Part shown: piece after piece, positions 5,903-64,000 of the stretch
Layout of the letters: every line of letters begins with the position of its first letter
Numbering within the stretch: position 1 is the stretch's first letter
Assembly (NCBI RefSeq): GCF_036321535.1
Contig: NC_087438.1
Span: 98,704,001-98,768,000 of the forward strand
DNA from: Camelus dromedarius
Lineage: Eukaryota
Length of the DNA stretch: 64,000 bases
Reading direction: 5' to 3'
Translations under genes and position numbers: made by a program
Notes under the pieces: generated by a model
The model's input: only the letters and a program-made list of their open reading frames with translations
The model's database searches: none
Told to the model about the DNA's origin: nothing

Positions 5903-5929
5903 GTCGCATGGTGGCGCTGCAGGATAAGA
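5903..5929 (+). promoter_or_regulatory. Pcdh conserved sequence element (CSE, CGCT box) / forward CTCF site of PCDHB18
   Basis: gtcgcatggtggcgctgcaggataag about 250 nt upstream of the ATG. The same motif precedes all three PCDHB genes. CSEs are established CTCF-binding promoter elements. Confidence 0.9.
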
Positions 5930-40930: not shown

Positions 40931-40947
40931 CACACCAGGCGGCGCTG
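40931..40947 (+). promoter_or_regulatory. Candidate orphan forward CTCF / CSE-like site
   Basis: cacaccaggcggcgctg closely matches the CTCF core CCASYAGRKGGCRSY and contains the CGCT box. No intact gene follows. Binding is untested. Confidence 0.5.
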
Positions 40948-41299
40948 ACTACGAGGCAGCAGAGAATGGCTCCAGCTCCCGCACTTCCCATGCAGAATGC
41001 TTCCAGATGTTGTCCGTACACAGGAGGTGGAGAAACTGATATTATAGACAAGCAAGACAGCTTGGAACTGACTGTCTTGGGAGGTCCCTTTCAGACTGGA
41101 TTGTTTGGACTGAACTATCATGATACTGCCTCAGCCCTACAAGGCATTTGAGTCAGCTTCAACGTACCGACCAGAGTTGTGCTGTGTCTGAGTTGATGCC
41201 TTGGGCCAGGTAAAAAGATTACAACAAAAACTGAAGCAGGAAGATACCTGGCTTTCTAAGATAGGCCTTTATGGTTAGTGAGATTTGTTTAACTGGCCA

Positions 41300-43050
41300 A
41301 ATCTAGGACCTGCAACTGCTGTACTTAGAAAGACCTTCTGGCAAGGCTGGCCCTTTGTTTGCATCTAGGATTTGGATTTTAGGAGTGTCCCCAGCATTTC
41401 ATAACTGATGTAGGTGGTTTATTGTGCCCTAACTGTATATACAGACGATGTAGTTTATGCTAGGCAGGGGATGCCCATGTGACCAGCACCCAATAAAACC
41501 CCCCGATTTCTAGACTCAGGTAAGCTTCCCTGGTAGACAACACTTCATATACATTGTTAAAATTTGATGCTGGAAGAATTAGCACATTCTATGTGAATCC
41601 AAGGGGAGAGGATTCTTAGAAATTTGTATCTACTCTCCTCCAGACTTTCTCCTGTGCACATTTAATCCCTTTGCTGATTTTTCTTTGTATCCTTCTACTG
41701 TATTCCTTTACATACTCATATACATGAGTATGATTACATGCTGAGTCTCAGGAGTCTTTCTAGCAAATCACCAAACCTGGGGATGGTCTTAGGGACCTCC
41801 AAGGCCAAACCCTTTCATTTGTTCCCTGACTGGTAGAGTAAGAAACATTACAGCGGAAAACCTGAAATTTCCCTTTCCCTAGCCAAGATAGTAGATCATA
41901 AGTAACATTGCATCCTAATAAGAATTTCAGAGATTAGCACTACATCCTAAAACTTAAAGCATGCAGAGGTAATAGTCTGCATCATATCCTCATTTACTTC
42001 ACCTGTTCACCCCGACTATGATGGCTCATAGTGATGACAGTGGACTGCAATTTACTGAACCAATTAGTTGCTCCGATTACAGCTGCCATACCAGTGGTTA
42101 TCTTTACTGAAGTAGATCAATATGACCTTTAGCACTTGGTGGGTGGCTGTTTTCCTGATGAACGCATTCATCTTAAATCCATCAGTGAATGAAATCAAAA
42201 GCATTTCATCTTCTCATTACAGGATAGCAAAACACATTCACTGTCTTGCCCCAGAGCTATGTGAACTCTTTTACTTTCTTTTGTAACATACTCCACAAAG
42301 ACCTCAACATTGAACCTTCTGCAGAACATAATGTTAGACTACTGTGTTGATGACATTGTGCTAATTGGGCCTAATGAGCAGTAAACGAAAAGGACCCTGG
42401 ATGACTTAGCAGGCCCATGTATGTCAAAGAGCAAAAGATTAGCCCCATGAAAATTAAGGGGCCTGCCCCATCAGAGATGATGCTAGGGGCCTGGGCATGC
42501 CAGGAAATTCCCCTGAGGTAAAATACAAGTTATCGCTTGCATCCCCTGCCACTAAGGAAGAGGCACTGTTTTGGGGGACCTCTTTAGATTTTAGAGGCAA
42601 CATATATCATATGTGGAACTCAAAATGCTGCAAGGTTTAAGCAGGGCCTGGAGTAAGAAAAAAGATATGTAGGAGATCAAGGCTATAATACTAGCCAATC
42701 TAATGTGACCTAGTCAATCTGAAGTTGCTAGAAGTGCCCATGGTGGTTAAGGATGCTGTGTGGAGTTTCCAGGAAGCCACAGTAGGAGAATTATAATGCA
42801 AACCTTATAGTGGAGATCCATGCCTTCTATAGCAATTAACTTCTCTGTGTTTATATAGATGCTGTCATGCTCCTGAGCCCTAGTAGAGACTGAGTGGCTG
42901 ACTATGGGACACTAAATGATCATCATGCCATCAGAGGTGCTCATCGTGGGCTGGTATCATCAGAGCCTTAACCTTAAACATAAGGTTAGGTAGGTATAGG
43001 AGCTGAGCAGTAGCAAATGAATTTGCTGGTTGGCTTAGCACCTGGAAGCC
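41300..43050 (+). mobile_element. ERVL-class LTR (MER21/68/77-like) plus pol fragment
   Basis: LTR with ccaataaaacccc and a terminal ggggatggtcttagggacctcc. Positions 42340-42381 translate YCVDDIVLIGPNEQ, a degenerate RT YxDD motif. Confidence 0.65.
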
Positions 43051-43079
43051 TGTGGCTTAGCACAATCATTATATTAGAG

Positions 43080-45759: not shown

Positions 45760-46560
45760 GATTCCCATGACTGGTGCCAAGGAGATAGGGGAGGACTTTT
45801 GTGGGCAATATCTCCAAAAACCTAGATCAGGAACGCAGAGTGTGGAGAAGAGTTTTCCATTCTTCTAAAGGCAGAAGGGACCCTTTGCTCCCAATGCACA
45901 CCCAAAAAGCCATTTGTAAATCAATCAGCAAAGAAGTTAAATGGAAGGATGCCCTGATTAATGTCTGCTGAGAGTCCAGGTTGCTGAGGAGGACCCAGTG
46001 AAACTGATTTAGGCTGGTGCAGAAATTCTCACTATATAGACAGTTAATCTGGCTTCCCTGTAGCAGAAATAATACTCTTTCTGGGGACAATTTTTTCCCT
46101 TACAGAATGTGCAGGATTGTTAACAGATCTCAATTTTCTACAAAACTACTTACCCACCTGTGAAATTTTTCATCTCAAGGTGCAGACTAAAGCCAGCAAT
46201 GCCCAATGTTGTGAACTAGTTTTGAAAAAGCCATGATATCTGCTGCAACAAACAGAACATCAGAACAATGACCTCCACCAACCTTAAAGAGGTAGGGACA
46301 CCAGAAGAGTCTAGTCTGCCTTTTAAACATCACGGACATCATTCACAAGGGGCCTGTATTTAAGTGCTGGTATTAGGAGGGAGCTAAAAACACCATGGAT
46401 GGTGGAGTTCAAAAGGCAGGCCGCAGATTTGGATGATAATTCCAACACTAAAATAATTTGCTTTCTAAAAAGATTCTCAGAGAAGATGTCTCGACCATTC
46501 CATATGAACCTGGAGAGATCAGACACCAGAGAGTCACAGACTTTGAAAACAGGGATTTTC
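45760..46560 (+). pseudogene. Highly decayed clustered-protocadherin (gamma-A-like) variable-exon relic
   Basis: Colinear motifs across frameshifts: FVGNISKNL (45798), EDPVKLI*AGAEIL, GQFFPLQNVQD (46085), LQNYLPTCEIFHLKVQT...ELVLKKP (46138-46233), ITDIIHKGPVF, AADLDDNSN (46420), PGEIRHQRVTDFE (46509). These follow EC1-EC3 order. Confidence 0.75.
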
Positions 46561-48004
46561 AAAGCTCAGATTTAGGCATCAGAAATATGGATTTGATCAA
46601 TTTAAATCTTAGAAATAAATACCATCTGCATTCTGCTTTAATCCAGGCCTGCTTGAATGAAGCCCCACTAAGTAGCTGCTGACTGTTTATGTATGTAATA
46701 TATAACTTAAATGTATAAATAAAGTAAAGTAGAAAATTGTTTTCTTTTAAAGAAAAAATAAATGGAAGACCAGGTATTGCTCTGGAGCTTACCTGGCATA
46801 AGACTGAGCATCCTTTCCCACAAATGTCTGCCGCAGCCCCCATTTGTCAACATCTCATTACCCTGACCCTCTTGCCTCTGGCAACATGGCTAGAGTTACC
46901 ACAAAGGCATCACAAATAGCAAAAAGATGAAGGAATTAGAGATTCCATGTCAGTTTTACATTCTGCCAGCAATGATAGACACACTTGCTATGGAATATTA
47001 AGATTGGGAGCCAGCCTGTTTTCAGCTTTACAGGCTGCTTAAGAACACTTCTTAATGAGAGAAGCTCTACTGGTCTGGATCAGCAAGGAATGATGAGGCT
47101 TACTTTAATGATGACAAGAATGACCATGGGGTCAAAGAACAGGTGCTCATCACAGGTCTGTGGGGATCAGATGAACTGCGGTTTTTTGGTTTTGGTTTTT
47201 GTCAGTGCCTATATACATACATATAGCATAGTTTAATAAAATGGCTTTTCTTATGTTTGATTTATAAAGTCATATCCTATATGTAGTCATCAATAAAATT
47301 CACTGATGGCCAGTACCAAAGTTAGAGGGTTCCAACTCTGTAAAAAAAAAAAAAAATGACAAGGAGTTATGGACCCTGTGGTAAACTTCAGGATGGATCA
47401 GCCCTAACATTAATCACTGTGGACTGCAAGCAGTAAGTTCTGTCTAGTTCTGTCTGAGAGGAGAGGGTTTCATCCACTAGTAATGTCACTTGATCATCAC
47501 CAGCGAACAAAACATTCTCTTGGCTTTGGCACCCTCTGTTCCCTGGGTTTCTGACTGGTGAAGACAGGGAGGACAGTGAATGATCTAAAGTGGGTCAACA
47601 TCCCCTAAATGGGCCAACAGTACATCACAGAATCCAACCCGGGGCCAGGACCCAGAGACTGGAAGCTAAGAACTGTTGTGAGCTACATGGGTCTTCATCA
47701 AAGCATAGCACAGCCCCATCCCTCACTTCTTCCTCAGTCTAAACTTCAGCAGAGAGGAAGCTCTTTGGGAGAGGAGAGGAAGGAAACTTGGTACAATAAG
47801 GGCCAGGATACGTCCCAAAGGCTTAATGCTCTAGGCCACACTAAACTAAGAGTGTGGAATATGAGCCCACTTTGAAAATGAACAGCATAATTTTAAGAAT
47901 AGAGGATCCTGGAGAAATTCAGGATGCCTCATCTGAAACTTTAACTCAAGAATGTGGAAGCAACACCAGTATGCAGGTATATTCTCTTTAAAATCTAGAT
48001 GGGA

Positions 48005-48936: not shown

Positions 48937-49842
48937 TCAGTATGCTTCACAGTGGCTCATCATCATCTTCCTGCTGTATTCATAAGCCAAAAACAGTGAC
49001 CCATTGGCAGGGAACGCTCGAACCAAAGTAGCTTTCAGTCCAGAATATAAGGCTGCTACTCCTTCATTTTTCACAACACTTACAAGAGTTCTGATAAATC
49101 CTGCCTGTTTTCCAAACATGGAAAGAACCTGAATTCTGGATTTGATACAATCCACGGGGTATATGACAAGCCAAAGACAAATTCCAGCAATACCACCACT
49201 TAACATCAAGGGAACAGGGCCAAGTTCATCTTTGGATCCTCCTGAAGCAAAAAATGATCGGCTCAGTTCATACCCACCGAAGAAGAAGAAGTAGCCCGGT
49301 ACTTCTTGAAGTAGAGTGCTCGAAAGTCCACGGTAGAAGCCCAAGGGTCCATCCTTTCTAAGGATACTCTTCACGACGGACCAGACTGTATTATGGCTTT
49401 TTGCTATCCTCCCTGACATCTCCATCTCGTGCATGGTCTGCAGCCGGCACTTCACAAGCTCAGTGGGGCACAGGGCCAGCGCGGCAAACGCGGAGGCGAA
49501 GGAACCCGCGGCCGCAGTCTGCAGATCACTCAGCTTTGCCTGCTTGTCCAATCCAACCACTTTACTCACAAACTGCTGGCAGAAGCCGTAGCACATAAAG
49601 AGGACGGAGTTCTCTGCGACGTAGGCCATCAGCGCTGGGCCCGTCCCCTTGTAGAAGCCCCGCAAGCCCACTTGGGAGTACGTCTTCAAGCAGCAGTCGA
49701 TGAGGCCCTTGTACAGGCCAGGGAACGTCTGCATCTTCACTTTCATGGTGTCGAAGGGCTGCCCGGTCAGGACGCAGGCTGTGCCCCCGAGGGCCCCCGC
49801 GGTGAGGTCGATGGCGGCTTGGATGGCAGGATTGGACTCCAT
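48937..49842 (-). CDS. SLC25A2: Mitochondrial ornithine transporter 2 (ORNT2/ORC2), 301 aa, intronless
   Basis: Three carrier signature motifs (PFDTMK, PTELVK, PVDCIK). Residues E77, Q179, E180, W224 and R275 are present, and Q179 distinguishes ORC2 from ORC1 (R179). The intronless CDS and position between the beta and gamma clusters are established for SLC25A2. Confidence 0.97.
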
Positions 49843-50700
49843 GTTCGCCCACTGATCTGCTGGTCCCCGGGAAAGGCCACTCTCTGCAGCCTAACACGGG
49901 CGTCTTATGTCCCGACGCCCACTCTGGACTCTCTCCCCCGCGGGAGAAGCCGCTTAACCCCAGACTAGGCCGCCCTCCGCGCGCCCTGAAATAACCCCCT
50001 GCGGACCGCCTTGCGCGCGCCTTTCCACGCGCCCCGCGGCCCCCGCCCCGCCCCGCCCGCCGCCTGCCGGGCGCCGCCCGCCATCCCCGCGCCCCCGGCC
50101 GGGGCGCAGACTAGGTAAACATTTTTAATGGACTACAATCCAGCGATTGAAAGCTGTTCGATAAATTCTTGCGATTTCGGCGGGAACCGCTAGGCGCCGC
50201 TACTCACCGGCTTTCCTATTCGGCCTGCCCCTCCACCGCCCGCATTTCCTACTCGGTAAATCAAACTGGGCGGGGGCTGGGGGGAGGGGTGCTCCCGTTT
50301 GACCGTGACTGGGGTCAAAGGGTCAACCTCAGAAACAGGTTTTAAATAGGGAAAACAAACAAACTACTGGGGGGAGAGGGGAGCGGTTTACATGAGAATA
50401 CGTGGCTCCTTTGAATCAGAAAACCCTTAATCCTTTCCCGAGAGGAATGGCGGCTCAGCAAAGGTGCCGGCCCGCCGCGCCCCTCTGGGTCTCGCCCTTT
50501 GCTCGCCTAGCGACGCTGGCTGAGGCCCGAGGCCGGCAGATCCGCTACTCGGTGCCTACGGAGCTAGAGAAAGGCTGTTTCGTGGCAACGCGCCTAGGAT
50601 CTGAGCCTAGATCCTGCGAGCTGGTGGGACGCAGAGTCCCCATCATTTCCAGAGGTAGGACAAGGCCTTGTACCATCGGGTTGGAAAACGTATCTATATA
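49400..50700. promoter_or_regulatory. CpG island / SLC25A2 promoter with tandem GC boxes
   Basis: Dense CpG; (ccccg)3 Sp1-type boxes at 50041-50056 upstream of the SLC25A2 ATG. Confidence 0.8.
50186..50208 (+). promoter_or_regulatory. Gamma-type CSE-like / CTCF-like element
   Basis: accgctaggcgccgctactcacc contains the CGCT box and lies about 260 nt upstream of the relic ATG at 50447, similar to CSE spacing in the intact genes. Confidence 0.6.
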
Positions 50701-50820
50701 GAGCTAAGAAACTTGATAGAAGAGAGCTGTGTGGCTCCAGAGCTGTTCGCGCCGCTTCATGGTTCTTGTTGAGGAGCCATACAGCTTTATGCAGCAGCAA
50801 TTCTGGAAAGCAATGACCAT
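50447..50820 (+). pseudogene. Truncated PCDHGA-like relic (signal peptide plus EC1)
   Basis: MAAQ...[21 protein letters not shown]...IISRGRT (compare PCDHGA QIRYSVPEELEKGSFV...ISRGRT). After frameshifts come KKLDRRELCG (50712) and ILESNDH (to 50820). No recognisable EC2. Confidence 0.82.
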
Positions 50821-53759
50821 AGGCCTAGTAGGCAAGATGTGGTTTGGGGCATCATTGTGGGTACCGCTGTAGCCTACCTCCACCTTTTTCTCCCAGATCC
50901 TTATAATTCCAGCTTTGGAACGAATTTTCTTAAGGTTTACATTCTAAGCTCTAGGCGGTATTTTACCTTGGGGGTAAAAACAAAATGGGGAAGTTGTCAG
51001 GTGTGCTGAAATGATTCTTCCATTCAGGAAGCTTTCCTTGTCTGATTCTTTGGCTCCCAGTTAACATTTTAAAGTGTGGCACCCAAAAGCAGATTGTGCA
51101 TGGATAGTTTGTCAATAGGTAGACTTTAGTGTAGTGGTAGACAGTGACCAGGCCTTTGTTTAGAGAATACCCGAATGTCAGTATTTGGATTTCTTTTCTC
51201 TGGGCTCACATGGTTTCTTCAGAGAATAATCTTACAGTCTTGACTCTGTTTGTGTGTGTTTGGGGGTGATGTATGCCTTGGGTACTGATTTAATGAGACC
51301 AAAATAGGGTAAGAGGGGTGACATCCTGCAGTAAAGAAAACATATTTTCACATAACCCCCTTGTTTAATGTTATACATCCCAGCCTTCATCTGGACCTGC
51401 TTTCTCTGAGTTTGAGCCTTTGGTTCAATTTATCCAGAAAATAAACTTTCCATCTGTGGGATGGGTAAGTAAGAGTTACCTGGCTTCCTCGAGTGACATA
51501 GGGATCCTGCACATCCAGCTGTGAACACACTTTAATGAATCCTGTTTCCAGCCCCACTTCCGTCTTCCTTGGAAACTTTGCCTACAAAAATTGTCTCACA
51601 GTTTCTATATCAAGTGGGTGTGTCTCTCTCTCTCTTTCATATACCCCCTTACAGACATTTAGCATGTAACTTTCTGTGATTTCTCAATTATCATTTCTTC
51701 ATCTGCTTTGCCCTTCTGAAAACAGGTTGACATTTCTCATTCACTGTTGTCTCATTTCCTATTCTTTGTCCTTGGGGCTTACTATGTTATATTGGCAGGC
51801 TTTTTGATAGAGAAAAGAGATATGTGAGAACAATGCACCATTTTAAACTAGAAAAAAAATGTTAAATTCTTCGTATCATATTTGAGGGATTTTTTAAAAT
51901 GTTTTGGTATCACCCTCAGGAAAGTCAATAAGGGAAAATCATATTTTAATACTTACTATGGAGGTCCTATCAAGTTTTCTAGAGGAGCATTCAGTTTTAA
52001 CTACTGTCAATTAATTACATATGGTTCATTGTTAATTTTTTAAAAACACACACAAGAGATACTTTTGTATTAAGTTCATATATGTATGTTTTGGAGAAAC
52101 CAAACTAATAATCAAGGCCAGGTAGGGCATTAATAGGGAAATGGTCTTTACCTTCATTGAATTGTCGGACATAGTTGCACAAATAGTGACAGAAAGAGAT
52201 TGAGTTCCGTAAAGTGTATTTAAACAGCTGGACTTGGAGAGAACACACTTCAGCAAATACTGTAACACTGCCCAAGACACTGGGCAGTCATAAGCATCTG
52301 AAACCATTTTTTCCCGATTCTAACTAACCAAAATTATGCTTCTGTTTTGAATTTAAGCACATGTCCTCCCAAGCATACGTGGAAAATAATGGCAAAGAAA
52401 CTTTCAACTTTTCAGTGAAGACCACCACCCTTGACTAGATGTGAACACCCACATCACATGTTCCCTAGCAATTAGATTGAGTGGCCAGGTAGGATTACCA
52501 GAGAAAGTGAGGTTTGAGCTGAGGCCTGAATAACAAAAAGCTAGCCATGAGAGGATATAGAGACTGTTCAGGAAAAGGGAACTGTAAATGCTAAATAAAG
52601 CTCTGTAGTGAGAAAGAACTGGGCATTTGAAGTACAGAAAGGCCAGTATAGCTGATGTTTGGTGGGCAGTCTTCCTAGTCTGTTTTCACACAGAATTCTT
52701 ACTGGATAATAAGATAAGCAAGAGGTCAAGACACAGTCCTTCAAAGACATGAATTGTCACTATTTGTCCAAATTTCTCATCTCAAATAAACATTTGCTCT
52801 CCAAATTCAAAATGTCAGGCTTTATGACATTTCGAACTGAACACAAAGATCCCACTTACCTAATCTATGGATATAATGCAAAATGGAAGCCAGACTGATG
52901 TGCTTATTGCAGCATTCTGTGTAATAGCAAATTTAAAATGGAACAATGTAAGTGACCAGCAATAGGGGAGTGGATAAAATCAAGGGAAAAAAAAATCTGT
53001 ATCACGAAAAATAGCAGGAAGTCTCTATGTGCTGATATGGAAGGATACTCGTAATAAATTTTTGAGTGATAAAAGTTTTAGAATAGTATCTATAACAATA
53101 TATATTTTTTGCTTTACAAGACTATATATATGTATACAATTAATTGTACACCAAGTAAAGGCCTGGACCAATACATCTCAAAAAGTTACCCTGGAAAGTT
53201 GGTGTGAAAGGGACAACTTTACTTTGTATTTTTTGCAAAATTTTTGCATTACTTAAAATTTTTCAGTTACTCTTCTAATTCCTGTATGTTAAAACACTAA
53301 TTAAAGAAAATTCAGCTGTTCATCAACTCAAAAATACTGAAAACTGCAGCCCAACTGAACATCATACTCATCAGGCAAGGGAGCTGGGAAAAGTCTTTTT
53401 TGCTAACTCTGGATTTACCTAAAGAGAAATGAATCCCAATCTTCTTCAGTTAACCTTTTCTCTTTTGAAGTTTATTGTAACAGATATTTACTCTTCATTA
53501 TGGAGGTTTTAATATTAGTGCAAAGCCAAGCCATAAATAAATCAAAAGCAATAAAGCTACAGTAGTAAACCAACTCAATTTACTTATTCTGCAGATGAAT
53601 TTGAAGCAAACTCTGCTTCTGTCATTTATAAACTCTGATTTAGAATAATTAATCTGAAATCAACCACATGTAAAACACAGTTATTTATACACTTTTCTAC
53701 CACTTTGATCACTCTTTAATTCAAGTAATTATTTAACCCCTATTATGTAAAGACTCTAG

Positions 53760-54499: not shown

Positions 54500-54509
54500 T
54501 TTATTTATT
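54500..54509 (-). terminator. Candidate TAF7 polyadenylation signal (overlapping AATAAA)
   Basis: tttatttatt on + reads AATAAATAAA on -, about 490 nt downstream of the TAF7 stop. Confidence 0.55.
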
Positions 54510-54999: not shown

Positions 55000-56049
55000 T
55001 CACTTCTCTAGGAGTGATTCTAGCTCTTCTTGCAGAGAGCTGAGCTGCTCCTTTTCTCGGTCTTCCTTTTGTTTCAGTTCATCTAGCACAGCCTGAAATC
55101 TGTTCTTGAGAGCCAGGTTTTCCACTTTCATGATGAGATCCTCCTGTCGCTTTGCCCTGTCCTGGGTCTCCTGGAGCTTGCCTTTCATGTTATCAATCTG
55201 TTTCTGGATTCCCATAACCAGCTGATTGGTTCCCTCGTTTTCTTGGTGCTGTTCATCTGATTCATTTAGCTTGTCCTGTAGCTGTCTTTCCAGATCTTCC
55301 TCAGTGTCGATGATGTTTATATCTTCTTCATCTTGATGCTGCGTCTCATCTTCATCTTCGCTGCTGCTGCTGAGGTCATTGAATATCTCCCGAAGCTCAT
55401 CATGTTCTAATGAGTCATGGCCCTGCCTGTGGCCAGACATTCCTGGAGAAGCGATATCAAGGCCCTGATTTTCTGTTTCTTTTGTTTCATCTTCAGCAAT
55501 TATTTCCCAACGAGTACTGACAGCTTCAGCATCTGTGCTCAGCAACCGCTTCACTTCTTTTTCCACATCTGGAGATTCAATATACTTCTTCTTTGCTGTC
55601 TTCCGGAACCTTCTCTTTCGGACATTTTTTAGAGGCAGAGTAATTCCATGGTTCCATACAAATTTTTTCTCTTTGTCCTTATCCTTTTTCTTGCTTGCTT
55701 TGGGATCAGCAGTAGCAACTGGTTCCTCCACAGGAGGATAGAGATCACCATCAACTGTAGAGACAAGCATCTGACAGATATCAGCTGTCTTGTAAAAGGT
55801 TTTCTTATCAATGGTTTTCAAACTTTCCATAACACACGGCAGATCCACCAGTTTTGAGGCCAGTGGGACCCGATCCACTCTGACGATTCCATGACGCCCA
55901 TCAGGGTGTAATTCAATTGTCAGTCTGTCCTTCAGGTTGACATGGCCAGACTGTACTGCTCGCCTCACAGTAGAGGCATACTCTGGAGGAAGGCGTAAGA
56001 TAAACTGGCTCTCCAGTTCATGAGGAGCATCATCTTTGCTCTTACTCAT
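55000..56049 (-). CDS. TAF7: TFIID subunit 7 (TAFII55), 349 aa, intronless CDS
   Basis: MSKSKDDAPHELESQFILRLPPEYASTVRRAV...NHGITLPLKNVRKRRFRK...LQEELESLLEK, with length equal to human TAF7. The track's 56094 start is a GTG, so the true ATG is 56049. Confidence 0.98.
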   Translation of the reverse strand: MSKSKDDAPHELESQFILRLPPEYASTVRRAVQSGHVNLKDRLTIELHPDGRHGIVRVDRVPLASKLVDLPCVMESLKTIDKKTFYKTADICQMLVSTVDGDLYPPVEEPVATADPKASKKKDKDKEKKFVWNHGITLPLKNVRKRRFRKTAKKKYIESPDVEKEVKRLLSTDAEAVSTRWEIIAEDETKETENQGLDIASPGMSGHRQGHDSLEHDELREIFNDLSSSSEDEDETQHQDEEDINIIDTEEDLERQLQDKLNESDEQHQENEGTNQLVMGIQKQIDNMKGKLQETQDRAKRQEDLIMKVENLALKNRFQAVLDELKQKEDREKEQLSSLQEELESLLEK

Positions 56050-56307
56050 CTTTATTTCTTGGTGACTCACTTCTCTAATAACCACTTGTTGCACTAAAAA
56101 GTTCCACCTATTTCAACAGAAAGACCAGTTCGCTATGAATTGAAATTTTAATTACAAACAGTTCTAAGTACAACAGCAGCTAAGCGTCTATTTTAAATTA
56201 AGCCCCAAGTCTTTCTAAGTATGCTGTGGCTGAATAGCAGTCGTTACTGACACGTTGCCTTACTCAATTAAGTCCATTTAAATCTTAGCTGCAATGCCAA
56301 GTTCCAA

Positions 56308-56323
56308 CCTCTAGATGCCGCTG
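56308..56323 (+). promoter_or_regulatory. Gamma-type CSE-like / CTCF-like element inside the TAF7 leader region
   Basis: cctctagatgccgctg has one mismatch to the CTCF core, and the same GCCGCT variant occurs in the elements at 50186 and 62725. Confidence 0.5.
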
Positions 56324-56551
56324 CAGGACAACGCAGAGAGCTAGCCAGCAGGAAAGCAAATGGCGGCTGCTACGGAATGATTTTCGGCACACAAAGCTAA
56401 GGCCCAGCAGACACTCCCAATCCACAACTCTCCCGGAACAAAGATATTCAAAAAGCGGGGCGTAGTGAGCTCTCTTCGCCTCGGGTACTTACAATCCAGT
56501 GACGATTATAAATCCAGTTTCTCCGGACAGGAGCGAGCAGAAGCCACTCCG

Positions 56552-56637
56552 GAGCAAGGCGGCCCGTGGCCGAGCGTCTCCTTCTTGATTCCTTTGTTCT
56601 TTCCGGCTCGCGGCAATCAGGAGCGATTCGCTACTAA
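56552..56637 (+). pseudogene. Possible PCDHGB-like signal-peptide relic
   Basis: GPWPSVSFLIPLFFPARGNQ, then IRY* after a frameshift (compare PCDHGB GPRQVLFPLLLPLFYPTLCEPIRY). The match is short, so the call is tentative. Confidence 0.4.
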
Positions 56638-58799
56638 TTATTAGTGAAACAGCTCAGGACAGGCAACACGAAATCTCGCTGATATCCGCAGCTTCGAGAG
56701 CCAGATTCTGCAGCTCCTCAGCTGCGCAGCTCGGCAGCTCAGCAGACCTCCGTCCGGAGCTGCAGACCCAGCGGAGAATAAAACGCTACGCAACCGGAGG
56801 CGGCTATGAGTGACAGCACAACTCGGGCGGAAGTGCGCACTGCCCCGGCGCGCGCAGGCGCAACGCACAATTACGCTATCCAGCGTGACTTGTCTCGCGA
56901 GAAGTTGGCTTTACGCGATGAAGATGATACTCTCGTGAAGAACGTTGGTTTGGAAATATTTAGAGAAAACAATACCAAGAAAGACATAGATTCTCCGGCC
57001 CGCCCCCGCTAAGCCAGAACTTTTAGCGGATCGCCATGAAGCCGGATAGCTCCTTGGCTTCCGGGTGATTGCCGGAGATAGGGAGTCCGTGAGGAAAGCG
57101 TCCTTTTCCTGGAAACATCTGGATGCTCCCCGGGCTGTATCCAATTTGGAGCCGAACTAAGAATTTATAACTAACCATGCTGTGGATTTTAAAACACCCA
57201 AATCAGTGGAGTGAGGACTTGCTGTCCACTATGTAGTTCTAAGTCTGTGTGTGCTGGTTATGGAAATGTTCGTAGGAGGCCTATGACTAGGGGTCTGTTT
57301 CTGTTTTGAAGGCCCTCAGAAGGAACAAGGATGATTCCTCTTTTTAATGTATTCGACGTAGATGTAAATGGTAACAGAGAAGTAAGTGTTCTTCTGGAGG
57401 CCCATGTTCGTTTAGGACAGTTATCTGAAAGACGAATGGTCTGATTAGAGTATAATTCAAATATTACTCCCTGTCAGTCATTTGCCAGTAATTTTTAAAT
57501 TAGTTTGGAATTTTTAAAATTCCACCTCTACTGTTTTGAGAACTGTTTTCTGCTTGCCTCTTGTATGGGTGGTCAGTTATTCATCAACATGTATTTATAG
57601 CATTTTAGCCTAACTATGTAACAGTTTCCACTTCTTCCTATTCATTTCCATTTATTTTTTAATAGGATCAGTTTGGTAGAGCATCAAGGTCATTTAAAAT
57701 TTAATTTCTGTCCTCTAAAATATTAACACCTGCATCTAAGTTTAAGAGAACTCACTAAAAATGTGATTAACATCTACAAAATTAACTGTATTTCTTTATG
57801 TACTTGTCTCCCTTGCTCTAGGTTGGAAGCTCCATGATAATCAGGAATGTAATATTTTGTTCATCTGGTCCTGGTGCCTAGTATCAAAACATGGGAGATA
57901 AAAAAAATAGTTGCTAATTGAATGAAAGAATTGATCCATCCAGAAAAAATATATATAAATATAGCCCAAATTCTTTAATAATTTGTGAGAGAAAATATAT
58001 TCCAAGTCACATTAAAATGAGATACAGCAACTTTATATACATTTCCTCTCCAGTCAGGGACAGTGCCAATTATCATGAGGGGAGAAGTTTGCAAAAAGTG
58101 TGTGTGTGAATGTGTTGCCTTTGCTTTTAGTAGACTGTGAGACTATGTATGATGGGGGGGATTTAAATGGCTTGGCACCAGTCTGATTTTTTTTTTATGT
58201 TAAGTCTGAGGAAAAATTAAGCTCTTCCACATAATTGTACTTTAGTTCTTTGTTCTGTAATGTGTTGAAGAATGTTAGCTGATGTATTTCCAGGATTCTC
58301 TCTTTCCTCTTTTTGAAGATGAAATTTTCCCCCTGTACTTATCCCTTCATTGTACCAGATTTTACGCATTTCATAGATATGAGTTTAACATGCTAGCCTC
58401 TGCATAATCCTTTTTTGTGATTATAAAATTTGAGGCCCAGCTTATACAAGAAGGTTATCCATATATTGCTTTGCATTTTAATTGCCTATGAGTTTTATGA
58501 TGTTCAAATATCTTTGTCACAGAAAATAACCTGAGATAAATTCTATGCAATTCTGATTTGCCAAAATTATGATATATTTTAGTTAGTAAGCCTTTAAGTA
58601 GAAGATTGTCAGGAATAATTAAAAGGATCAACTGTAGTTTCCCCTGAAGTATCTACCTCCTTCAATCCTGAAACATATTTTCTCCTTTTGAGTTTGACAC
58701 GTTTTCTGAAGGCTATTTTTTTGCAGGGTAATTACATTGATCCTAAAGCTAAGAGCTCTGCCAGGTCACCATTACCTTAATGTCTGTTGATACATGCAC

Positions 58800-58800
<1 letters not shown>

Positions 58801-58840
<40 letters not shown>
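58801..58840 (+). repeat. (TG)20 microsatellite
   Basis: Seen directly. Confidence 0.97.
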
Positions 58841-58843
<3 letters not shown>

Positions 58844-59339
58844 ATGTTTATCAAATCCATTTGACATACAGAAACACTTTGAGTTGATGAAAGAATTACA
58901 CTCCTGTGATTGTTCCATGGAATATCTGTGATACTAGTGAACCAAAGATTTGGGGGTAGCAGTAAATTCTCCAGAGTAGTAACAAGGCTCAGAAGGCTTC
59001 CTACCTATGATAAAGGAGTAGCACTATCAAGCTAATGCTATATGATTGAAAATTCCCTTTAATAAACTTCCAAGTTCCTTATACTGTGGGTGTTAAAAAA
59101 TTATGGGTTATGGGAGAAGCCTTGCTTGTATCTTGGAGATAGAAAATTAAATTATAGGAGTGAGGAAATAGCAAATACCCTTATATATTGCTCTAGTAGT
59201 ATATAAACAGTGAAAAGCACGTTAGCCAAAATGTTGCAGTCTCTTGTATTAAGTGTGATGCTTTCTATAGAAAAAAGACCAACCTGATTTACACTGGTTT
59301 AAACAATAAGAAAATGTTTTTGAAAACCAGGTAGTCTTG

Positions 59340-59700
59340 AGCAACTCTGTTCAACAGAGATATAATATGACCCATAGATGAAAGCCACATTATTAAATTA
59401 TTTAATATTAAATTATCTAGTAGCTGCATTAAAATGGCAAAAGGAAACACATGAAATTAATTTCGGTAGCATTTTATTTAGCCTAATTATCAAAAATATT
59501 TCAACATAGAATCAATGTAGAAATTGTTAATGGTATGTTTTACATTCTAATTTTGTACTAAATCTTCAAAATCTGGTGTGTATTTTACACTGAAACACAT
59601 TTCATTTTGGACTAGTCACATTTCACGTTCTCAGTGGCCATGTGTGGCTGGCTGATGGTTACTGTATTGAACAGTGCAGTTCTAGAAACATGGCTGCCTC
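59340..59700. mobile_element. hAT-Charlie fossil, MER33/MER3-like
   Basis: Ends ggactagtcacatttcacgttctcagtggccatgtgtggctgg...tattgaacagtgcag, the typical MER3/MER33 terminus. Confidence 0.7.
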
Positions 59701-59999
59701 TAGGCATGATAGAATCATGGCCTGGCACAAATTGTTTTAACTTCCTGATTTTAGAGAATGAACATTTATTTATACTTGTTATTCTTTCAGCTTTTCCCTC
59801 ATCTTGTAAACTTCGAGAGTCTATGGTCATAAGAAATCTGACAGAAGTAACTGGGGAACTTCCTTTCTTGGCCGTGGTAAGTTCAGAGAGTGTCTCTCCC
59901 TAACCAGAATCTGTCTTTCAACTTGATTGGTCTAACTAAGACTATACACCTATCCCTGGCTCAATAGTAGTCACCAGGGGAATACCCTAAGCCTATGAT

Positions 60000-60195
60000 T
60001 TTCAAAATGGTGGGGAGGAGAAGACATTTGATGATGCCTGGAGACATTTTGATTGTCGCAACTGTGGGGGTGGTATCTACTGGCATCTAGTGGGTAGAGG
60101 CCAGGGATGCTGCCAGATATCCTATAATGCACAGAGCATCCCCTCCACAACTAAGTTATCGGGCTCAAAATATTACCAGGGTTGAGAAACCTTGC
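60000..60195 (+). mobile_element. MER20-like hAT transposon fossil
   Basis: gtctggagacatttt-like core and tactggcatctagtgggtagaggccagggatgctg...gttgagaaacc. Confidence 0.75.
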
Positions 60196-60399
60196 CCTAA
60201 GCTCAGTTTTTAAATTATTAATTGTTTTAAGCCAGTATTCCTCACTAAACACTGACAAGAGGAGTGAGATCACCACTATTGGTTTAGTATCAGACCCTAC
60301 TACAGCTATGAATGGGTTCACCTTCCCCTTAGGTATGTGGAGAGTGGACCCACTACACTAAAAAGAAAGTGTTAGAAGAGATGAAAGGGCATGGGCAAC

Positions 60400-60737
60400 T
60401 GTCTTAGTCTTTTTGGGCTGCTGTAACAGTACCATAAACTGAGTGGCTTATAAACAACAGAAATTAATTTTTCAGCTCTGGAGGCTGAGAAGTCTGAGAT
60501 AAAGGCACTGACAGCTGTGGCGTCTGGTGAGCGCAGGCTTCCTGGTTCGTAGATGGTAGTCTTTTTTGCTGTAATCTCACGTGGTGGAAGGGATGAGGGA
60601 GCTCTCTGCAGCCCCTTTTACGTGATGACTCCACCTTGATGACCTAATCACTTCTCACGAGCCCTACCTTTAAATACCATCACATTGATTAAGTTTCAAC
60701 ATGTGAATTTTGGGGGACATAAATAGTCAGTCTGTAG
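60400..60737 (-). mobile_element. MLT1A-type MaLR solo LTR
   Basis: tgtcttagtctttttgggctgctgtaacagtaccataaactgagtggcttataaacaacagaaatt...tttcaacatgtgaattttgggggac. Confidence 0.8.
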
Positions 60738-60779
60738 AGGTAACCGATGGTATACAAGAAATAGCTGATTATTGGGGGG

Positions 60780-62330
60780 ATTTTAATAGTATGTATGTAA
60801 CTCCAAAAAAGATACAAATGGCCAGTAAGCCCATGAAAAGATGTTCAACATTATTAATCATTGGGGAAATGCAAATGAAAGCAACAATGAGTTGCCACCT
60901 TACACCCATTAGGATGACTACTCTCCAAAAAAAGGAAAGTGACAAATATTGGTGTTATATGGAATAATGAAACCCTTGTGCACTGTTGGTGGGAGTGTAA
61001 AACGGTTCAGCCACTGTGAAAAACAGTCAGTGTTTCCTCAGAAAAATTAAAGAGAATTACCATGTGATCCAGCAATTCCACTTCTGGGTATATTTCCCAA
61101 AGAATTAAAAGCAGTGTCTCAAGGAGATTCTTGTATACCCATGTTTAGCAGCGTTGTTCACAGTAGCTAAAAGTTAGATGCACCCCAAGTGTGCATCAAC
61201 CAGTGAAGGCATAAGCAAAATGTGGCATGTGTACATATGATGAACTAATTCCTCAGCCTTAAAAAGGAAGGAAATTCCTTTTTTTCTTTTGAGATATGAT
61301 TGACCTACAACACTATGTTAGTTACAGGTATACACATAGTCTTTTTCTATACATTAGAAAATGATCACCACAGTATCTCTAGTTACCATCTGTCACCATT
61401 CAAAGTTACTACAATATTGTTGACTATATTCCCCATGCTATACACCCTTGTGACTCGTTTATTTTGTAATTGGAAATTTTTAATATCCCTCACCTTTTTC
61501 ACTCATCCTCTCACCCCTCTCCCTTCTGGCACCCACTTGTTTGGTCTCTGTATCTGTGAATCTGTTTTTGTTTCGTTATATTTGTTCATTTGTTTTGCTT
61601 TTGTAGATTCCATATGTAAGTGAAATCATACAGTGTTCGTCTTTTTCTGTTAGACTTATTTCACTTAGCATAATAATACCCTCTAGGTCCATTCATATTG
61701 TGGCAAATGGCAAGATTTCATTCTCTTTCATGGCTGTGTAAATGTACAATACATCTTATCCATTCATTTATTGATGGACACTTAGGTTGCTTCTGTATCT
61801 TGGCTATTGTAAATAATGTTGCAGTGGACATAGGGGTGCACATATCTTTTTGAATTAGTGTTTTCATTTTCTTCAGAAACATACCCAGAAGTGAAATTGC
61901 TGGATCTTGTGGTAGTTCTATTTTTAATTTTTTGAGGAACCTCCATACTATTTTAAAAAGGAAGAAAATTATGACATATGCTGCAATATAGATGAACCTT
62001 GAGGATATTATGTTATGTAAAATAAGCCAACTACAAAAAAGGCAAATACTGTATGACTCTGCTTACATGAGGTATTTAGAGTGGTCAGAATCATAGAGAC
62101 AGCTAGTAGACAGTGTTTGCCAAGGGCTGGAGAGAGGGGAGAATGAGGAGTAACCATTTTATGGGTATACATTTCAGTTTTACAAGATAAAAAGAGTTCT
62201 GGTGATGGATGATTGAGATAGTTGCACAATGTTATAAATGTGTTTAATACCACTTAACTGTACACTTAAAAATGGCTAAGTTGGTAAATTTTATGTTATG
62301 TGTATTTTATCACAATAAAAACAGAAAAAA
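60780..62330 (+). mobile_element. L1 3' region (+) interrupted by a nested L1 3' end (-, about 61277-61952)
   Basis: The outer L1 reads MASKPMKRCSTLLIIGEMQMK. The inner inverted L1 is flanked by ttaaaaaggaag(g/a)aaatt at 61259-61276 and 61953-61970. Confidence 0.8.
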
Positions 62331-62377
62331 AGTATATTTGTCTTTTAACAGTATGGATAGGTGGGTAGGAGTGGGTT

Positions 62378-62444
62378 GGAGGTGGCAATAGTTCAGTGGT
62401 AGAGCTCGTGTTTAGCATGCACGAGGTCCTGTGTTCAAAAAAAA
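62378..62444 (+). mobile_element. Truncated tRNA-derived (Vic-1-like) SINE
   Basis: atagttcagtggtagagctcgtgtttagcatgcacgaggtcctgtgttc followed by an A run. Confidence 0.7.
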
Positions 62445-62724
62445 TTTTTTTTAAGAAAAGGAAGCTTCAGTAGTATTCTTCAAAAGGAAATGTCAAGAGG
62501 GAAATTCTGTCAGAATGTTTAAGTGGATGTCAATTTTAATAAATTAAAATTTTGATTTAAATTTTGTAGAAAGAGCATTTTATTCATATTTTGTCAAAAA
62601 GAAATAGAGACTTGTAGCCTTTGTACTAAACCAACCAGTATTGTAAAGGAAGTCCAAGGAATAAAGCAAATCCAGTCTCCTGTGAGGACCTTCAGAAATA
62701 ACAGGCGGTAGATATTGCCCTGGA

Positions 62725-62746
62725 CCTCTGGGTGCCGCTGTCGGCC
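62725..62746 (+). promoter_or_regulatory. Gamma-B-type CSE / CTCF element
   Basis: cctctgggtgccgctgtcggcc with a CGCT box, in a CpG-enriched patch about 315 nt upstream of the relic signal peptide. Confidence 0.7.
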
Positions 62747-62989
62747 AGTCCGTGGCTAGAGTGAAACAAAGGAATCCACTGGCGTTTCTGACGCAGCGAT
62801 CCCTGATCCCCGCAGACTTTTGAGAAACCCATCAGGAAGGGACTCTGCACACCGTCTCTCCCGGAATCTTTTCCAAATATATAGGTCTGGCAACTCAGGG
62901 TGAGCCGCTGCCTTGTCTTTCCAGTGCACTTTGGTATCCCGGCAGCAACCGCAGCGAGATGTATTCAGACCTACGAAGCAGCATCAAGA

Positions 62990-64000
62990 AGACACAGAAA
63001 GAGGTCCTCCCACTGGGAAGGGCGCGAGAGTGCAGGAAGCACTGTTTTCCTTCCTGCTGTCAGTGTTCACTCGAGTGAACTGCGAAGTAGATGCGCTGCA
63101 AGATTCCCGATTCTGGAAGAGGTAACCAAGGACTTAAAAGTGGGCAATTTTGCTAAAGATCTACATCTCGGTGACCAGAACCATGGGTGAGTGCTGAGAA
63201 GCCTGTCTTTACCGCCAGCAAAGAGAGCAGGGAGGAACAAGACAATGACAGGATAGATCTAGCTGGTAGGCCAAAGGAAGTCCCTAGACTCCCTGAACCT
63301 GAAAACTTTACTGGAAATCCTATAAATGCCTTTCATATAAATGTATTTTTATCCTGGATATAAATAACATAAGGCTTTTAGTGCGGCCATTTTGTTTTGA
63401 AAATTCTGGGGAAACATCTTAATAGGAGCAAAGTTTACTCCTAAACTGCAGTAGATATGGATGGTGCAAATAATTCTCTACAAATTTATGAGATTAGTTT
63501 CAATTAACCATTTCCCCCACTGCCAGAAGTAGAAGAGAGCACAAGGGCAGTAAATATCCTGGTTATTAGAGAAATTGGGACTGGAGGAGCAGAGCTGCCA
63601 CCACTTAGTGGTGGGAAGGAAGCAGAACAGCTCAGAGAATGAAACGGATCTTGGATGCCAGAGCCAACCCTCCCATACTGAACCACAAAGAGTACAGCAG
63701 AGTCTGCCTTCTGGAGGACGTGCCTTCCACCTCCTTGTCTACATTCTTCAGGTGATCCCTTCTGACGTAGATGATACCCCTAAGGTAGAGTTCTCCTGTA
63801 CTTCCCACACAGTCCCACAGGATATACAGAATATATCCTATAATAGCAAGCACCATCTTTGATTTTGAAGAGTGACAGTTACATCGTAGCCTCTTCTACG
63901 GTGTAGAAGAGGACAGGAGACAGTTAAGGGCCCAATCCTGGTTGAAATGGAGGTTGGGAACCATAATGCAGTGCAGGTGACTTTCAACTGAGTGTCTAGT
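62990..64000 (+). pseudogene. Decayed PCDHGB-like variable exon (runs off the window end)
   Basis: LFSFLLSVF (63042), PILEEVTKDLKVGNFAKDL (to 63163), NPINAFHINV, DMDGANNSLQIYEIS, EQSCHHLV, LDARANPP (63651), ILQVIPSDVDD and FDFEE* (63858). These are colinear with EC1-EC3, with many stops and frameshifts. Confidence 0.8.

What the first reader, a model, noticed from the sequence alone, without database searches (positions are those of the whole stretch)
40931..64000. Ghost array: the beta-gamma interval looks like an eroded upstream extension of the gamma cluster
Seen: CSE-like motifs and/or Pcdh exon relics occur at about 40.9, 45.8, 50.2, 56.3 and 62.7 kb, all on the + strand. Their spacing of about 4.5-6.4 kb resembles that of the intact beta CSEs here (5.6 and 4.8 kb). 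Two relics look gamma-A-like and two look gamma-B-like. Inference: the supposedly non-cadherin spacer is a dead tandem array of 4-5 variable exons whose promoters partly survive as CTCF sites and retrogene promoters. Some relics may already be noted in older comparative papers; I cannot check this.
Basis: inference. Interest (0 to 1): 0.75.

Follow-up and report, generated by a model that had tools for sequence, protein, structure and literature searches.

The report
Dead gamma-protocadherin exons around TAF7
The stretch between the camel beta and gamma protocadherin genes, usually treated as a spacer holding two unrelated genes, carries the decayed remains of at least three gamma-type protocadherin exons that died before placental mammals diverged.

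Summary
The window is dromedary DNA at the protocadherin (Pcdh) beta-to-gamma boundary. Three of the five proposed slots hold real Pcdh variable-exon relics, all on the + strand.

- **R1 (45784-46574):** gamma-A-like, EC1-EC3.
- **R2 (50447-50985):** gamma-A-like, with a promoter CSE at 50198. Its exon end at 53367-53461 rests on the Tamandua ortholog.
- **Gamma-B pseudogene (63003 to about 65139):** near full length, 16-17 frameshifts and 9-11 stops. Its CSE at 62736 is the best match in the region to a matrix built from sheep gamma promoters.
- **56.3 kb slot:** only a gamma-type CSE (56319), found in all seven genomes, 270 bp from the TAF7 start codon. No significant coding relic.
- **40.9 kb slot:** a chance-level CTCF-like motif only. 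Not supported.

R2 and the gamma-B pseudogene lie at the same places in bear, musk deer and the anteater Tamandua. The pseudogene shares disabling lesions across orders, so it was dead in the placental ancestor. SLC25A2 and TAF7 each sit head-to-head within 270-360 bp of a CSE.

Pcdh relics as a class are already published. I could not check whether these particular ones are catalogued. Verdict: largely right, with four slots rather than five and a subtype split of A, A, uncertain, B rather than two and two. Moderate interest.

The parts
5907..5923 (+). CSE of beta exon 1. Context only: the intact beta exons are 6145-8565, 11619-14048 and 16462-18957, and the other two beta CSEs are at 11480-11496 and 16295-16311.
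   Evidence: Alignment of the three upstream regions, pattern search giving 3 hits against 0.01 expected and the ORF list.
40932..40945 (+). CTCF-like motif (12 of 14 consensus positions). It is not supported as a Pcdh CSE or as an exon relic.
   Evidence: Scores 6.7 bits on the sheep gamma-CSE matrix. At this stringency the window has 20 hits against 6.4 expected. The best coding score downstream is 38, against a null 95th percentile of 41. No counterpart was found in the bear locus L012.
45784..46574 (+). Relic R1: gamma-A-like variable-exon remnant covering EC1-EC3 (residues about 18-325). It has 5-6 frameshifts, 2-4 stops and about 30% identity. No CSE is left.
   Evidence: Score 82-83 against a null maximum of 62, with gamma-A queries scoring above gamma-B. 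Corrected P about 1e-3. An ortholog is present in whale L010 (score 82), a second camelid L003 (73) and bear L012 (75).
48937..49842 (-). SLC25A2: intronless 301-codon ORF, antisense to the Pcdh array. Its ATG is 356 bp from the R2 CSE.
   Evidence: the source names it mitochondrial ornithine transporter 2. Pfam Mito_carr in the locus tables.
50184..50213 (+). Gamma-A-type CSE of relic R2. The CGCT box is at 50198, 251 bp before the relic's ATG.
   Evidence: 18.9 bits on the sheep gamma matrix and rank 2 on the A-type matrix. Present in bear (18.3 bits) and a caprine (12.5), below 11 bits in musk deer and whale.
50447..50985 (+). Relic R2, 5' part: ATG, signal peptide, EC1 and half of EC2 of a gamma-A-type exon. 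It has 3 frameshifts and 40% identity.
   Evidence: Score 170. PDB phmmer hits below E 0.01 are gamma-A chains only, and one alpha-4 chain appears at E 0.94. Pfam Cadherin_2 at E 0.009. The same N-terminal extent, ending within EC2 or early EC3, is seen in bear, whale and Tamandua.
53367..53461 (+). Relic R2, 3' end: the last residues of a gamma-A variable exon, followed by a mutated splice donor (cag|ttaacc).
   Evidence: Score 41 in camel, not significant on its own. The orthologous Tamandua segment scores 86 against a null of 47, with the motif PNY.DTLISQ..EKSE.
55000..56049 (-). TAF7: intronless 349-codon ORF, antisense to the array. The poly(A) signal is near 54500. Its ATG is 270 bp from the CSE at 56319.
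   Evidence: The AATAAA complement is visible.
56305..56334 (+). Slot R3: gamma/beta-type CSE with no recognisable exon behind it. The CGCT box is at 56319.
   Evidence: 15.3 bits in camel, a second camelid and whale, 19.8 in Tamandua, 17.0 in bear, 17.4 in musk deer and 15.0 in a caprine, always 270-295 bp upstream of the TAF7 ATG. The core is nearly invariant in five species.
56860..57127 (+). Borderline EC5-EC6-like similarity. Not significant and not claimed.
   Evidence: Score 60, corrected P about 0.6. The same borderline hit appears in a second camelid (60) and bear (58) but not in Tamandua or musk deer.
62722..62751 (+). Gamma-B-type CSE of the gamma-B pseudogene. The CGCT box is at 62736.
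   Evidence: Top hit in 66 kb on both strands: 29.3 bits overall, 29.8 on the B matrix and 19.3 on the A matrix. Scores 25.6-32.5 bits in four other species. The 15-bp core is identical in five species and is one of the three longest invariant runs in a 3-kb alignment.
63003..64000 (+). Gamma-B-like pseudogene. It runs on to about 65139 in the same genome, beyond the window. The alignment covers residues 2-774 of a gamma-B4 exon with 16-17 frameshifts, 9-11 stops and about 40% identity.
   Evidence: Score 344-358, with gamma-A queries reaching at most 124. The gamma-B label of the queries was checked against PDB names. Orthologs score 284-347 in a second camelid, Tamandua and bear. Shared lesions across orders are listed.

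Best explanation
The beta-gamma interval of the camel Pcdh locus is the decayed 5' end of the gamma variable-exon array, left by birth-and-death turnover of tandem exons. In cluster orientation it holds:
- a gamma-A-like exon remnant (R1);
- a whole but shattered gamma-A-like exon with its CSE promoter (R2);
- a gamma-type CSE with no recognisable exon (R3);
- a near full-length gamma-B-like pseudogene with an almost perfect CSE.

R2 and the gamma-B pseudogene were already there, and the pseudogene already dead, in the common ancestor of Xenarthra and Boreoeutheria. R1 is traced only within Laurasiatheria.

Shown here: the relics, their subtypes, their CSEs, their synteny and the shared lesions.

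Inferred: two intronless genes, SLC25A2 and TAF7, landed antisense in this dying array. Each ended with its 5' end 270-360 bp from a CSE-bearing promoter. Such a promoter can serve as a two-way promoter, which would explain why those two CSEs outlived their own exons. The CSE of the gamma-B pseudogene may still act as a forward CTCF site at the upstream edge of the gamma array.
For: - **Species and locus:** the window is a 100% match to a dromedary assembly.
- **Relic scores:** 83, 170 and 344 against a null maximum of 62, on the + strand only, with corrected P of 1e-3, 3e-14 and 2e-35.
- **Subtypes:** assigned from gamma-A and gamma-B query groups whose labels were checked against PDB names. 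The R2 piece hits gamma-A chains at E about 1e-3, with only a marginal alpha-4 hit (E 0.94) besides.
- **CSEs:** the independent sheep matrix puts 62736, 50198 and 56319 among six hits of 15 bits or more, against 0.13 expected.
- **Promoter geometry:** the R2 CSE lies 251 bp before the relic ATG, within the sheep range of 210-278 bp.
- **Synteny in other orders:**
- **Shared lesions in the gamma-B pseudogene:** a frameshift near residue 263 in all four species, a stop near 158 in camelids and Tamandua, and a stop near 698 in bear and Tamandua.
- **Retrogene geometry:** the SLC25A2 ATG at 49842 faces the CSE at 50198, and the TAF7 ATG at 56049 faces the CSE at 56319. The TAF7 arrangement is kept in all seven genomes examined.
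- **Literature:** Slc25a2 and Taf7 are reported as mammalian insertions into the cluster (PMC2764143).
Against: - R1 is only modestly significant and has no CSE.
- R3 has no significant coding relic in any species. Its conservation could come entirely from TAF7 5'UTR or promoter function.
- The 40.9 kb slot fails every test.
- The CSE core of the gamma-B pseudogene is highly conserved, but two other 15-bp runs in that pseudogene are equally invariant. Selection on the CSE is therefore not proven.
- The R2 CSE has decayed in musk deer and whale, although SLC25A2 is intact there.
- No marsupial or afrotherian DNA could be fetched.
Confidence: 0.75

Rival explanations
1. Only the gamma-B pseudogene and R2 are true in-place relics. 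The CSE-like element at 56319 is a TAF7 regulatory or 5'UTR element that resembles a Pcdh CSE by chance or convergence, because both are CTCF-type GC-rich motifs. It never belonged to a Pcdh exon.
For: There is no significant coding similarity downstream of it in camel (39 against a null 95th percentile of 41) or in any other species. The block around it is 79-90% identical between orders, against 65-73% for the neighbouring pseudogene, as expected for a functional TAF7 element. It lies inside or next to the TAF7 5'UTR.
Against: It scores 15-20 bits on a matrix built only from sheep gamma promoters, where 0.13 such hits are expected per 132 kb scanned. It is on the Pcdh strand. It lies midway (6.1 and 6.4 kb) between two proven relic CSEs. 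It repeats the SLC25A2/R2 head-to-head geometry.
Confidence: 0.3
2. The relics are not remains of a longer gamma array. They are pieces of gamma exons copied into the spacer by segmental duplication or gene conversion and then decayed.
For: Tandem duplication and conversion are frequent in Pcdh clusters (general knowledge, and PMC4151104 abstract). R1 lacks a promoter. R2 shows no recognisable EC3-EC4.
Against: Order, strand and spacing follow array logic. R2 and the gamma-B pseudogene carry their own CSE at the normal distance and run to the exon end, in R2 with a donor-site remnant. They are at the same places in four orders, and the pseudogene shares lesions. Identity to living gamma paralogs is only 30-40%, whereas living paralogs within a subfamily are 58-83% identical to each other.
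Confidence: 0.1
3. This is already-catalogued annotation. These are the 'relic (r)' and 'pseudogene (psi)' variable-region sequences drawn in the published human and mouse cluster maps, so the finding adds nothing beyond a camel copy.
For: A review figure legend states that relic or pseudogene variable-region sequences are present in all three human clusters (PMC7766791). The Wu laboratory uses the term 'relic' for such remnants (PMC1885805).
Against: I could not read the original 2001 and 2005 comparative papers. No open paper was found that links SLC25A2 or TAF7 to Pcdh relics or to CSEs. The anole paper describes the two genes simply as insertions.
Confidence: 0.45

Closest known systems
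Relic and pseudogene variable exons of the clustered protocadherins (for example PCDHGB8P and PCDHB17P-19P; 'r' and 'psi' in the published cluster maps)
   Same: Single large variable exons in cluster orientation, with a CSE promoter about 200-280 bp upstream, disabled by frameshifts and stops.
   Different: These lie outside the usually drawn gamma cluster, in the interval treated as a non-cadherin spacer, interleaved with SLC25A2 and TAF7. Whether they are among the published relics could not be checked.
Pcdh conserved sequence element (CSE, CGCT box), a forward CTCF site in each alternate promoter
   Same: The sites at 62736, 50198 and 56319 match a matrix built from real gamma CSEs, contain the CGCT box, are on the forward strand and, where an ATG is recognisable, lie at the usual distance.
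   Different: They no longer serve a coding exon. CTCF binding was not tested. Two of them face an unrelated antisense gene.
Retrogenes that acquire expression from a neighbouring CpG-island or two-way promoter (a general mechanism described for mammalian retrocopies; recalled from memory, with PMC4772013 seen only as a search listing and the opening line of its abstract)
   Same: SLC25A2 and TAF7 are intronless, antisense to the host array, and start 270-360 bp from a GC-rich Pcdh-type promoter.
   Different: The host promoters belong to exons that have since died. Promoter use by the two genes is inferred from geometry alone.
Birth-and-death evolution of tandem receptor arrays (V gene segments of immunoglobulin and T-cell receptor loci, olfactory receptors)
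   Same: Dead members lie beside living ones, with the same orientation and a spacing like that of live units.
   Different: Here the dead units form the upstream flank of the array and predate the placental radiation.

Membership tests
Clustered Pcdh gamma-A variable exon (as a relic): R2, 50447-53461 | N-terminal EC1 of protocadherin type (Cadherin_2), with better similarity to gamma-A than to gamma-B, beta, alpha or gamma-C | tested here: met
   Scores 130-170 with gamma-A queries against 69-90 with gamma-B and 59-93 with beta. PDB hits below E 0.01 are gamma-A chains only. Cadherin_2 at E 0.009, below Pfam's cut-off on the fragment.
Clustered Pcdh gamma-A variable exon (as a relic): R2, 50447-53461 | CSE with a CGCT box about 200-280 bp upstream of the ATG, on the same strand | tested here: met
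   CGCT at 50198 and ATG at 50447, a distance of 251 bp. Scores 18.9 bits and is A-type, with the downstream TCACC.
Clustered Pcdh gamma-A variable exon (as a relic): R2, 50447-53461 | One large exon ending in the gamma-A C-terminal motif and a splice donor | tested here: inconclusive
   The camel fragment 53367-53461 scores 41, at null level. The orthologous Tamandua fragment scores 86 against a null of 47. The middle of the exon (EC3-EC6) is not recognisable.
Clustered Pcdh gamma-A variable exon (as a relic): R2, 50447-53461 | Intact open reading frame (needed for a functional gene) | tested here: not met
   Three frameshifts within the first 490 bp, and no long ORF. It is a relic, not a gene.
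Clustered Pcdh gamma-B variable exon (as a pseudogene): 62722 to about 65139 | Full-length similarity (EC1-EC6, membrane span, proximal tail) that is best to gamma-B | tested here: met
   Residues 2-774 aligned. Score 344-358 against at most 124 for gamma-A. The query was labelled gamma-B4 by PDB names.
Clustered Pcdh gamma-B variable exon (as a pseudogene): 62722 to about 65139 | B-type CSE at promoter distance | tested here: met
   29.8 bits on the B matrix against 19.3 on the A matrix. CGCT at 62736, about 270 bp upstream of the first aligned residue at 63003.
Clustered Pcdh gamma-B variable exon (as a pseudogene): 62722 to about 65139 | Intact open reading frame | tested here: not met
   16-17 frameshifts and 9-11 stops in camel. 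The decay is similar, and partly shared, in a second camelid, bear and Tamandua.
Pcdh CSE / forward CTCF site: 56319 and 40943 | Match to real CSEs, with the CGCT box on the forward strand | tested here: met
   56319 scores 15.3-19.8 bits in seven genomes. 40943 does not meet this feature: it scores only 6.7 bits.
Pcdh CSE / forward CTCF site: 56319 and 40943 | A Pcdh variable exon follows within about 300 bp | tested here: not met
   N-terminal test scores of 39 (56.3 kb) and 38 (40.9 kb), against a null median of 34 and a 95th percentile of 41.
Pcdh CSE / forward CTCF site: 56319 and 40943 | CTCF occupancy that is sensitive to methylation | not testable with these tools
   No ChIP or methylation data were available.
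Processed retrogene: SLC25A2 and TAF7 | Uninterrupted coding region with no introns | tested here: met
   Single ORFs of 301 and 349 codons. The gene calls in all loci are single blocks.
Processed retrogene: SLC25A2 and TAF7 | Poly(A) tract and target-site duplications at the insertion | tested here: not met
   A poly(A) signal is present near 54500, but no A/T tract or duplication could be recognised. This is expected after more than 90 million years.
Processed retrogene: SLC25A2 and TAF7 | Intron-bearing parent gene elsewhere | not tested
   This rests on published statements (PMC2764143) and on memory of the TAF7L and SLC25A15 literature.

The most novel reading that the evidence does not exclude
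TAF7, a general transcription factor subunit, and SLC25A2 owe their survival as retrogenes to landing head-to-head on CSE-bearing promoters of gamma-type Pcdh exons. Those promoters were kept for the retrogenes while their own exons decayed. Together with the pseudogene's CSE at 62736, they would still bind CTCF as forward sites. That would make the supposed spacer an active part of the loop architecture that separates beta from gamma promoter choice.
Probability: 0.3. Interest if true: 0.6.

Novelty: new member of a known kind. Interest (0 to 1): 0.42.

Why it matters
- **History of the cluster:** it moves the historical 5' boundary of the gamma array upstream by about 20 kb. The ancestral placental array had at least two more gamma-type exons, R2 (A-type) and the gamma-B pseudogene, which was already dead by then. 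R1 adds a third but is traced only within Laurasiatheria.
- **Retrogene survival:** it offers a concrete, testable explanation of how two retrogenes became expressed inside a cluster whose promoters are chosen at random and silenced by methylation in most cells.
- **Chromatin models:** it flags three forward CSE-type sites that CTCF and cohesin loop models of the beta/gamma domain should count.
- **Limits:** none of this changes how living Pcdh genes are understood. The general existence of relics is already published.

Tried and rejected
- **tblastn with the window's own beta exons** gave only weak hits, best E 0.024.
- **The search of protein representatives with a beta exon** returned mostly giant or fused fish cadherins, too distant to help.
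- **Pfam on stop-free pieces** gave only two sub-threshold Cadherin_2 hits.
- **Mammalian gamma queries** were obtained by a length trick: an alignment whose first row is 1573 aa excluded the beta proteins. More came from a sheep gamma locus.
- **40.9 kb slot:** rejected as a CSE and as a relic. No counterpart in bear.
- **56.3 kb coding relic:** rejected as unproven.
- **Other C-terminal fragment hits** (29.4, 36.9, 51.7 and 58.9 kb) are at noise level.
- **Selection on the pseudogene's CSE:** suggestive only.
- **Marsupial and afrotherian loci:** opossum and elephant-shrew TAF7 places were found, but no DNA was served.
- **Original comparative papers** (Wu et al. 2001, Wu 2005) are not held. 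'PCDHGB9P' occurs in no held paper.
- **Reads:** RNA runs holding 30-53% of the words of 56100-59900 were found.
Full report
**What the window is.** The window matches a dromedary chromosome assembly at 100% identity over 45-64 kb. Other camel assemblies match at 99.6-99.8% and a second camelid at 97%.

- It holds three intact Pcdh-beta variable exons: 6145-8565, 11619-14048 and 16462-18957.
- Each has the same upstream CSE, at 5907, 11480 and 16295.
- SLC25A2 (48937-49842) and TAF7 (55000-56049) are single uninterrupted ORFs on the minus strand.
- All N runs lie outside the finding and were left alone.

**Getting usable queries.**
- The window's beta exons, and distant fish or reptile Pcdh sequences, gave only weak translated hits, all on the + strand, at about 46.1, 50.5 and 63.1-63.5 kb.
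- Pfam on stop-free pieces gave two sub-threshold Cadherin_2 hits, at 50.4 and 63.1 kb.
- For closer queries I searched with an alignment whose first row is 1573 aa. The length filter then excluded the roughly 800-aa beta proteins and returned fused mammalian gamma models.
- Cut into units, these fall into a gamma-A group and a gamma-B group. Identity is 58-83% within a group and 41-50% between groups.
- PDB names confirm the labels. One unit is gamma-B4 at 843 bits, and another matches gamma-A9, A1 and A8 best.
- A sheep locus with seven consecutive intact gamma exons added full-length A and B exons and, importantly, seven real gamma promoters.

**The relic scan.** I wrote a Smith-Waterman aligner of protein against DNA that allows frameshifts and stops. 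I ran 20 queries over 19.5-66 kb on both strands. The last 2 kb came from the same genome, locus L004.

- Reversed queries gave a null maximum of 62 per 1-kb bin. Real queries on the minus strand reached 58.
- Three + strand regions stand out, with Gumbel-based corrected P values:
  - 45.5-47.5 kb: score 83, P about 1e-3.
  - 50.5-51 kb: score 170, P about 3e-14.
  - 62.5-65.5 kb: score 344, P about 2e-35.
- The 56.5 kb bin reaches 60 (P about 0.6). The 40.9 kb slot never exceeds 42.

**Anatomy of the three relics.**
- **R1 (45784-46574)** aligns to gamma-A residues about 18-325 (EC1-EC3). It has 5-6 frameshifts and about 30% identity. Gamma-A queries score 72-83, gamma-B 45-58 and beta up to 68.
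- **R2** starts at an ATG at 50447. It aligns from the signal peptide through EC1 into EC2 (50498-50985) with 3 frameshifts and 40% identity. Gamma-A queries score about twice as high as gamma-B. A PDB search of its longest piece returns five gamma-A chains at E about 1e-3, plus a marginal alpha-4 hit at E 0.94.
- **R2's far end.** A fragment at 53367-53461 resembles the very end of a gamma-A exon and is followed by a mutated donor site. In camel it scores only 41, which is null level. The orthologous Tamandua segment scores 86 against a null of 47 and carries the gamma-A tail motif. R2 is therefore a whole exon, 50447-53461, with an unrecognisable middle.
- **The gamma-B pseudogene** aligns to residues 2-774 of a gamma-B4 exon over 63003-65139. 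It has 16-17 frameshifts, 9-11 stops and about 40% identity.

**Promoter elements.** A 30-bp matrix was built only from the seven sheep gamma CSEs and scanned over 66 kb on both strands.

- It gives six hits of 15 bits or more, against 0.13 expected.
- They are 62736 (29.3 bits, B-type), 50198 (18.9, A-type), 56319 (15.3) and one coding site in each beta exon.
- In sheep the CGCT box lies 210-278 bp before the ATG. It lies 251 bp before the R2 ATG and about 270 bp before the first aligned residue of the gamma-B pseudogene.
- R1 has no CSE left.
- The 40.9 kb motif scores 6.7 bits. As a generic CTCF core it matches 12 of 14 positions, a level reached 20 times in the window against 6.4 expected.
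- Downstream of the 40.9 and 56.3 kb motifs, the first 170 residues of gamma or beta exons give 38 and 39, against a null median of 34 and a 95th percentile of 41.
- The 40.9 kb slot is therefore unsupported, and the 56.3 kb slot is a CSE without a demonstrable exon.
- The only local hit near 56.3 kb (56860-57127, EC5-EC6-like, score 60) is borderline and in the wrong register for that CSE.

**Age.** I fetched TAF7- or SLC25A2-centred loci from a second camelid, Tamandua, bear, musk deer, a baleen whale and a caprine.

- **R2:** present at the syntenic place in all of them, with scores 109-193. Its N-terminal part ends at nearly the same point, within EC2 or early EC3, in camel, bear, whale and Tamandua.
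- **Gamma-B pseudogene:** present in the second camelid, Tamandua, bear and musk deer. Scores are 284-347 where the locus covers it fully.
- **R1:** present in whale, the second camelid and bear.
- **Shared lesions in the gamma-B pseudogene**:
  - a frameshift near residue 263 in all four species compared;
  - a stop near 158 in camelids and Tamandua;
  - a stop near 698 and a frameshift near 384 in bear and Tamandua.
- The pseudogene was therefore already dead in the common ancestor of Xenarthra and Boreoeutheria.
- **CSEs:** the pseudogene's CSE scores 25.6-32.5 bits in every species, and the TAF7-side CSE scores 15.0-19.8 in all seven genomes. The R2 CSE persists in bear and a caprine but has decayed in musk deer and whale.
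- The 15-bp core of the pseudogene's CSE is identical in five species. It is only one of three equally long invariant runs in that pseudogene, so selection on it is likely but not proven.

**The two inserted genes.**
- The SLC25A2 ATG (49842) is 356 bp from the R2 CSE. The TAF7 ATG (56049) is 270 bp from the CSE at 56319.
- Both genes are antisense to the array and head-to-head with a GC-rich Pcdh-type promoter.
- The TAF7 arrangement is kept in all seven genomes.
- SLC25A2 is absent from the Tamandua locus although R2 is there. This fits the relic being older than that insertion, or a loss in Tamandua.
- The anole study reports both genes as mammalian insertions into the cluster (PMC2764143).
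- That the retrogenes use these promoters is an inference from geometry.
- I could not test it.

**Comparison with what is known.**
- Relic and pseudogene variable exons are a published feature of all three human clusters (PMC7766791, figure legend).
- The CSE is established as a forward CTCF site with a CGCT box (PMC6881428).
- I could not read the original comparative papers to see whether relics at these slots are already drawn.
- I found no open paper linking SLC25A2 or TAF7 to Pcdh relics or CSEs.

**Verdict.**
- There are three provable dead exons: gamma-A-like, gamma-A-like and gamma-B-like.
- There is one promoter-only slot, at 56.3 kb.
- The 40.9 kb slot is chance level.
- The finding is a new member of a known kind and of moderate interest. 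The most interesting open point is the repeated retrogene-on-CSE geometry.

Noticed in passing
window 8117, 13615, 18506 (+) and 8379, 13871, 18768 (-): Each beta exon contains, in its EC6 coding part, a forward site that scores 19.4 bits on the gamma-CSE matrix. About 260 bp further on there is a reverse CTCF-core match with one mismatch. These may be just conserved coding sequence, or exonic CTCF sites.
   Followed up: no
window 59823-59876 (+): Gene models in three camelid assemblies start a 932-949 aa gamma protein with a tiny first coding exon here (18 codons, then gtaagt), upstream of the dead gamma-B exon. It may be a prediction artefact or a real upstream leader exon.
   Followed up: partly
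window 29591, 29961, 36345, 37529 (+): Four more forward CTCF-core matches (1-2 mismatches) lie in the part of the interval with no relics, near purposely masked N runs at 28465-28619, 29054-29202 and 31667-31812. No Pcdh coding similarity is present there.
   Followed up: no
L005 (Tamandua), whole locus: No SLC25A2 coding sequence lies within 10 kb of TAF7, although the R2 relic and its flank are present. This points to a later insertion in Boreoeutheria or a loss in this xenarthran.
   Followed up: partly
opossum TAF7 places (no DNA served): Opossum has the same intronless 360-aa TAF7 at two places. One is next to an RWD-domain gene, and no Pcdh gene is called within 10 kb. Marsupial TAF7 copies may not sit in the Pcdh cluster.
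   Followed up: no
L004 743-885, equivalent to 65166-65307 just beyond the window: The most conserved block of the 3-kb gamma-B pseudogene alignment (camel, bear, Tamandua) lies just after the dead exon's end, not in its promoter. Its function is unknown.
   Followed up: no
window 56100-59900: Several RNA-seq contig sets from reproductive-tract samples hold 30-53% of the sampled words of this stretch upstream of TAF7. That suggests transcription well beyond a short 5'UTR.
   Followed up: partly
L011 (caprine) against window 43.9-46.6 kb: The segment carrying relic R1 has no counterpart in the caprine locus, although the flanking sequence aligns. R1 seems to have been deleted in that lineage.
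   Followed up: no
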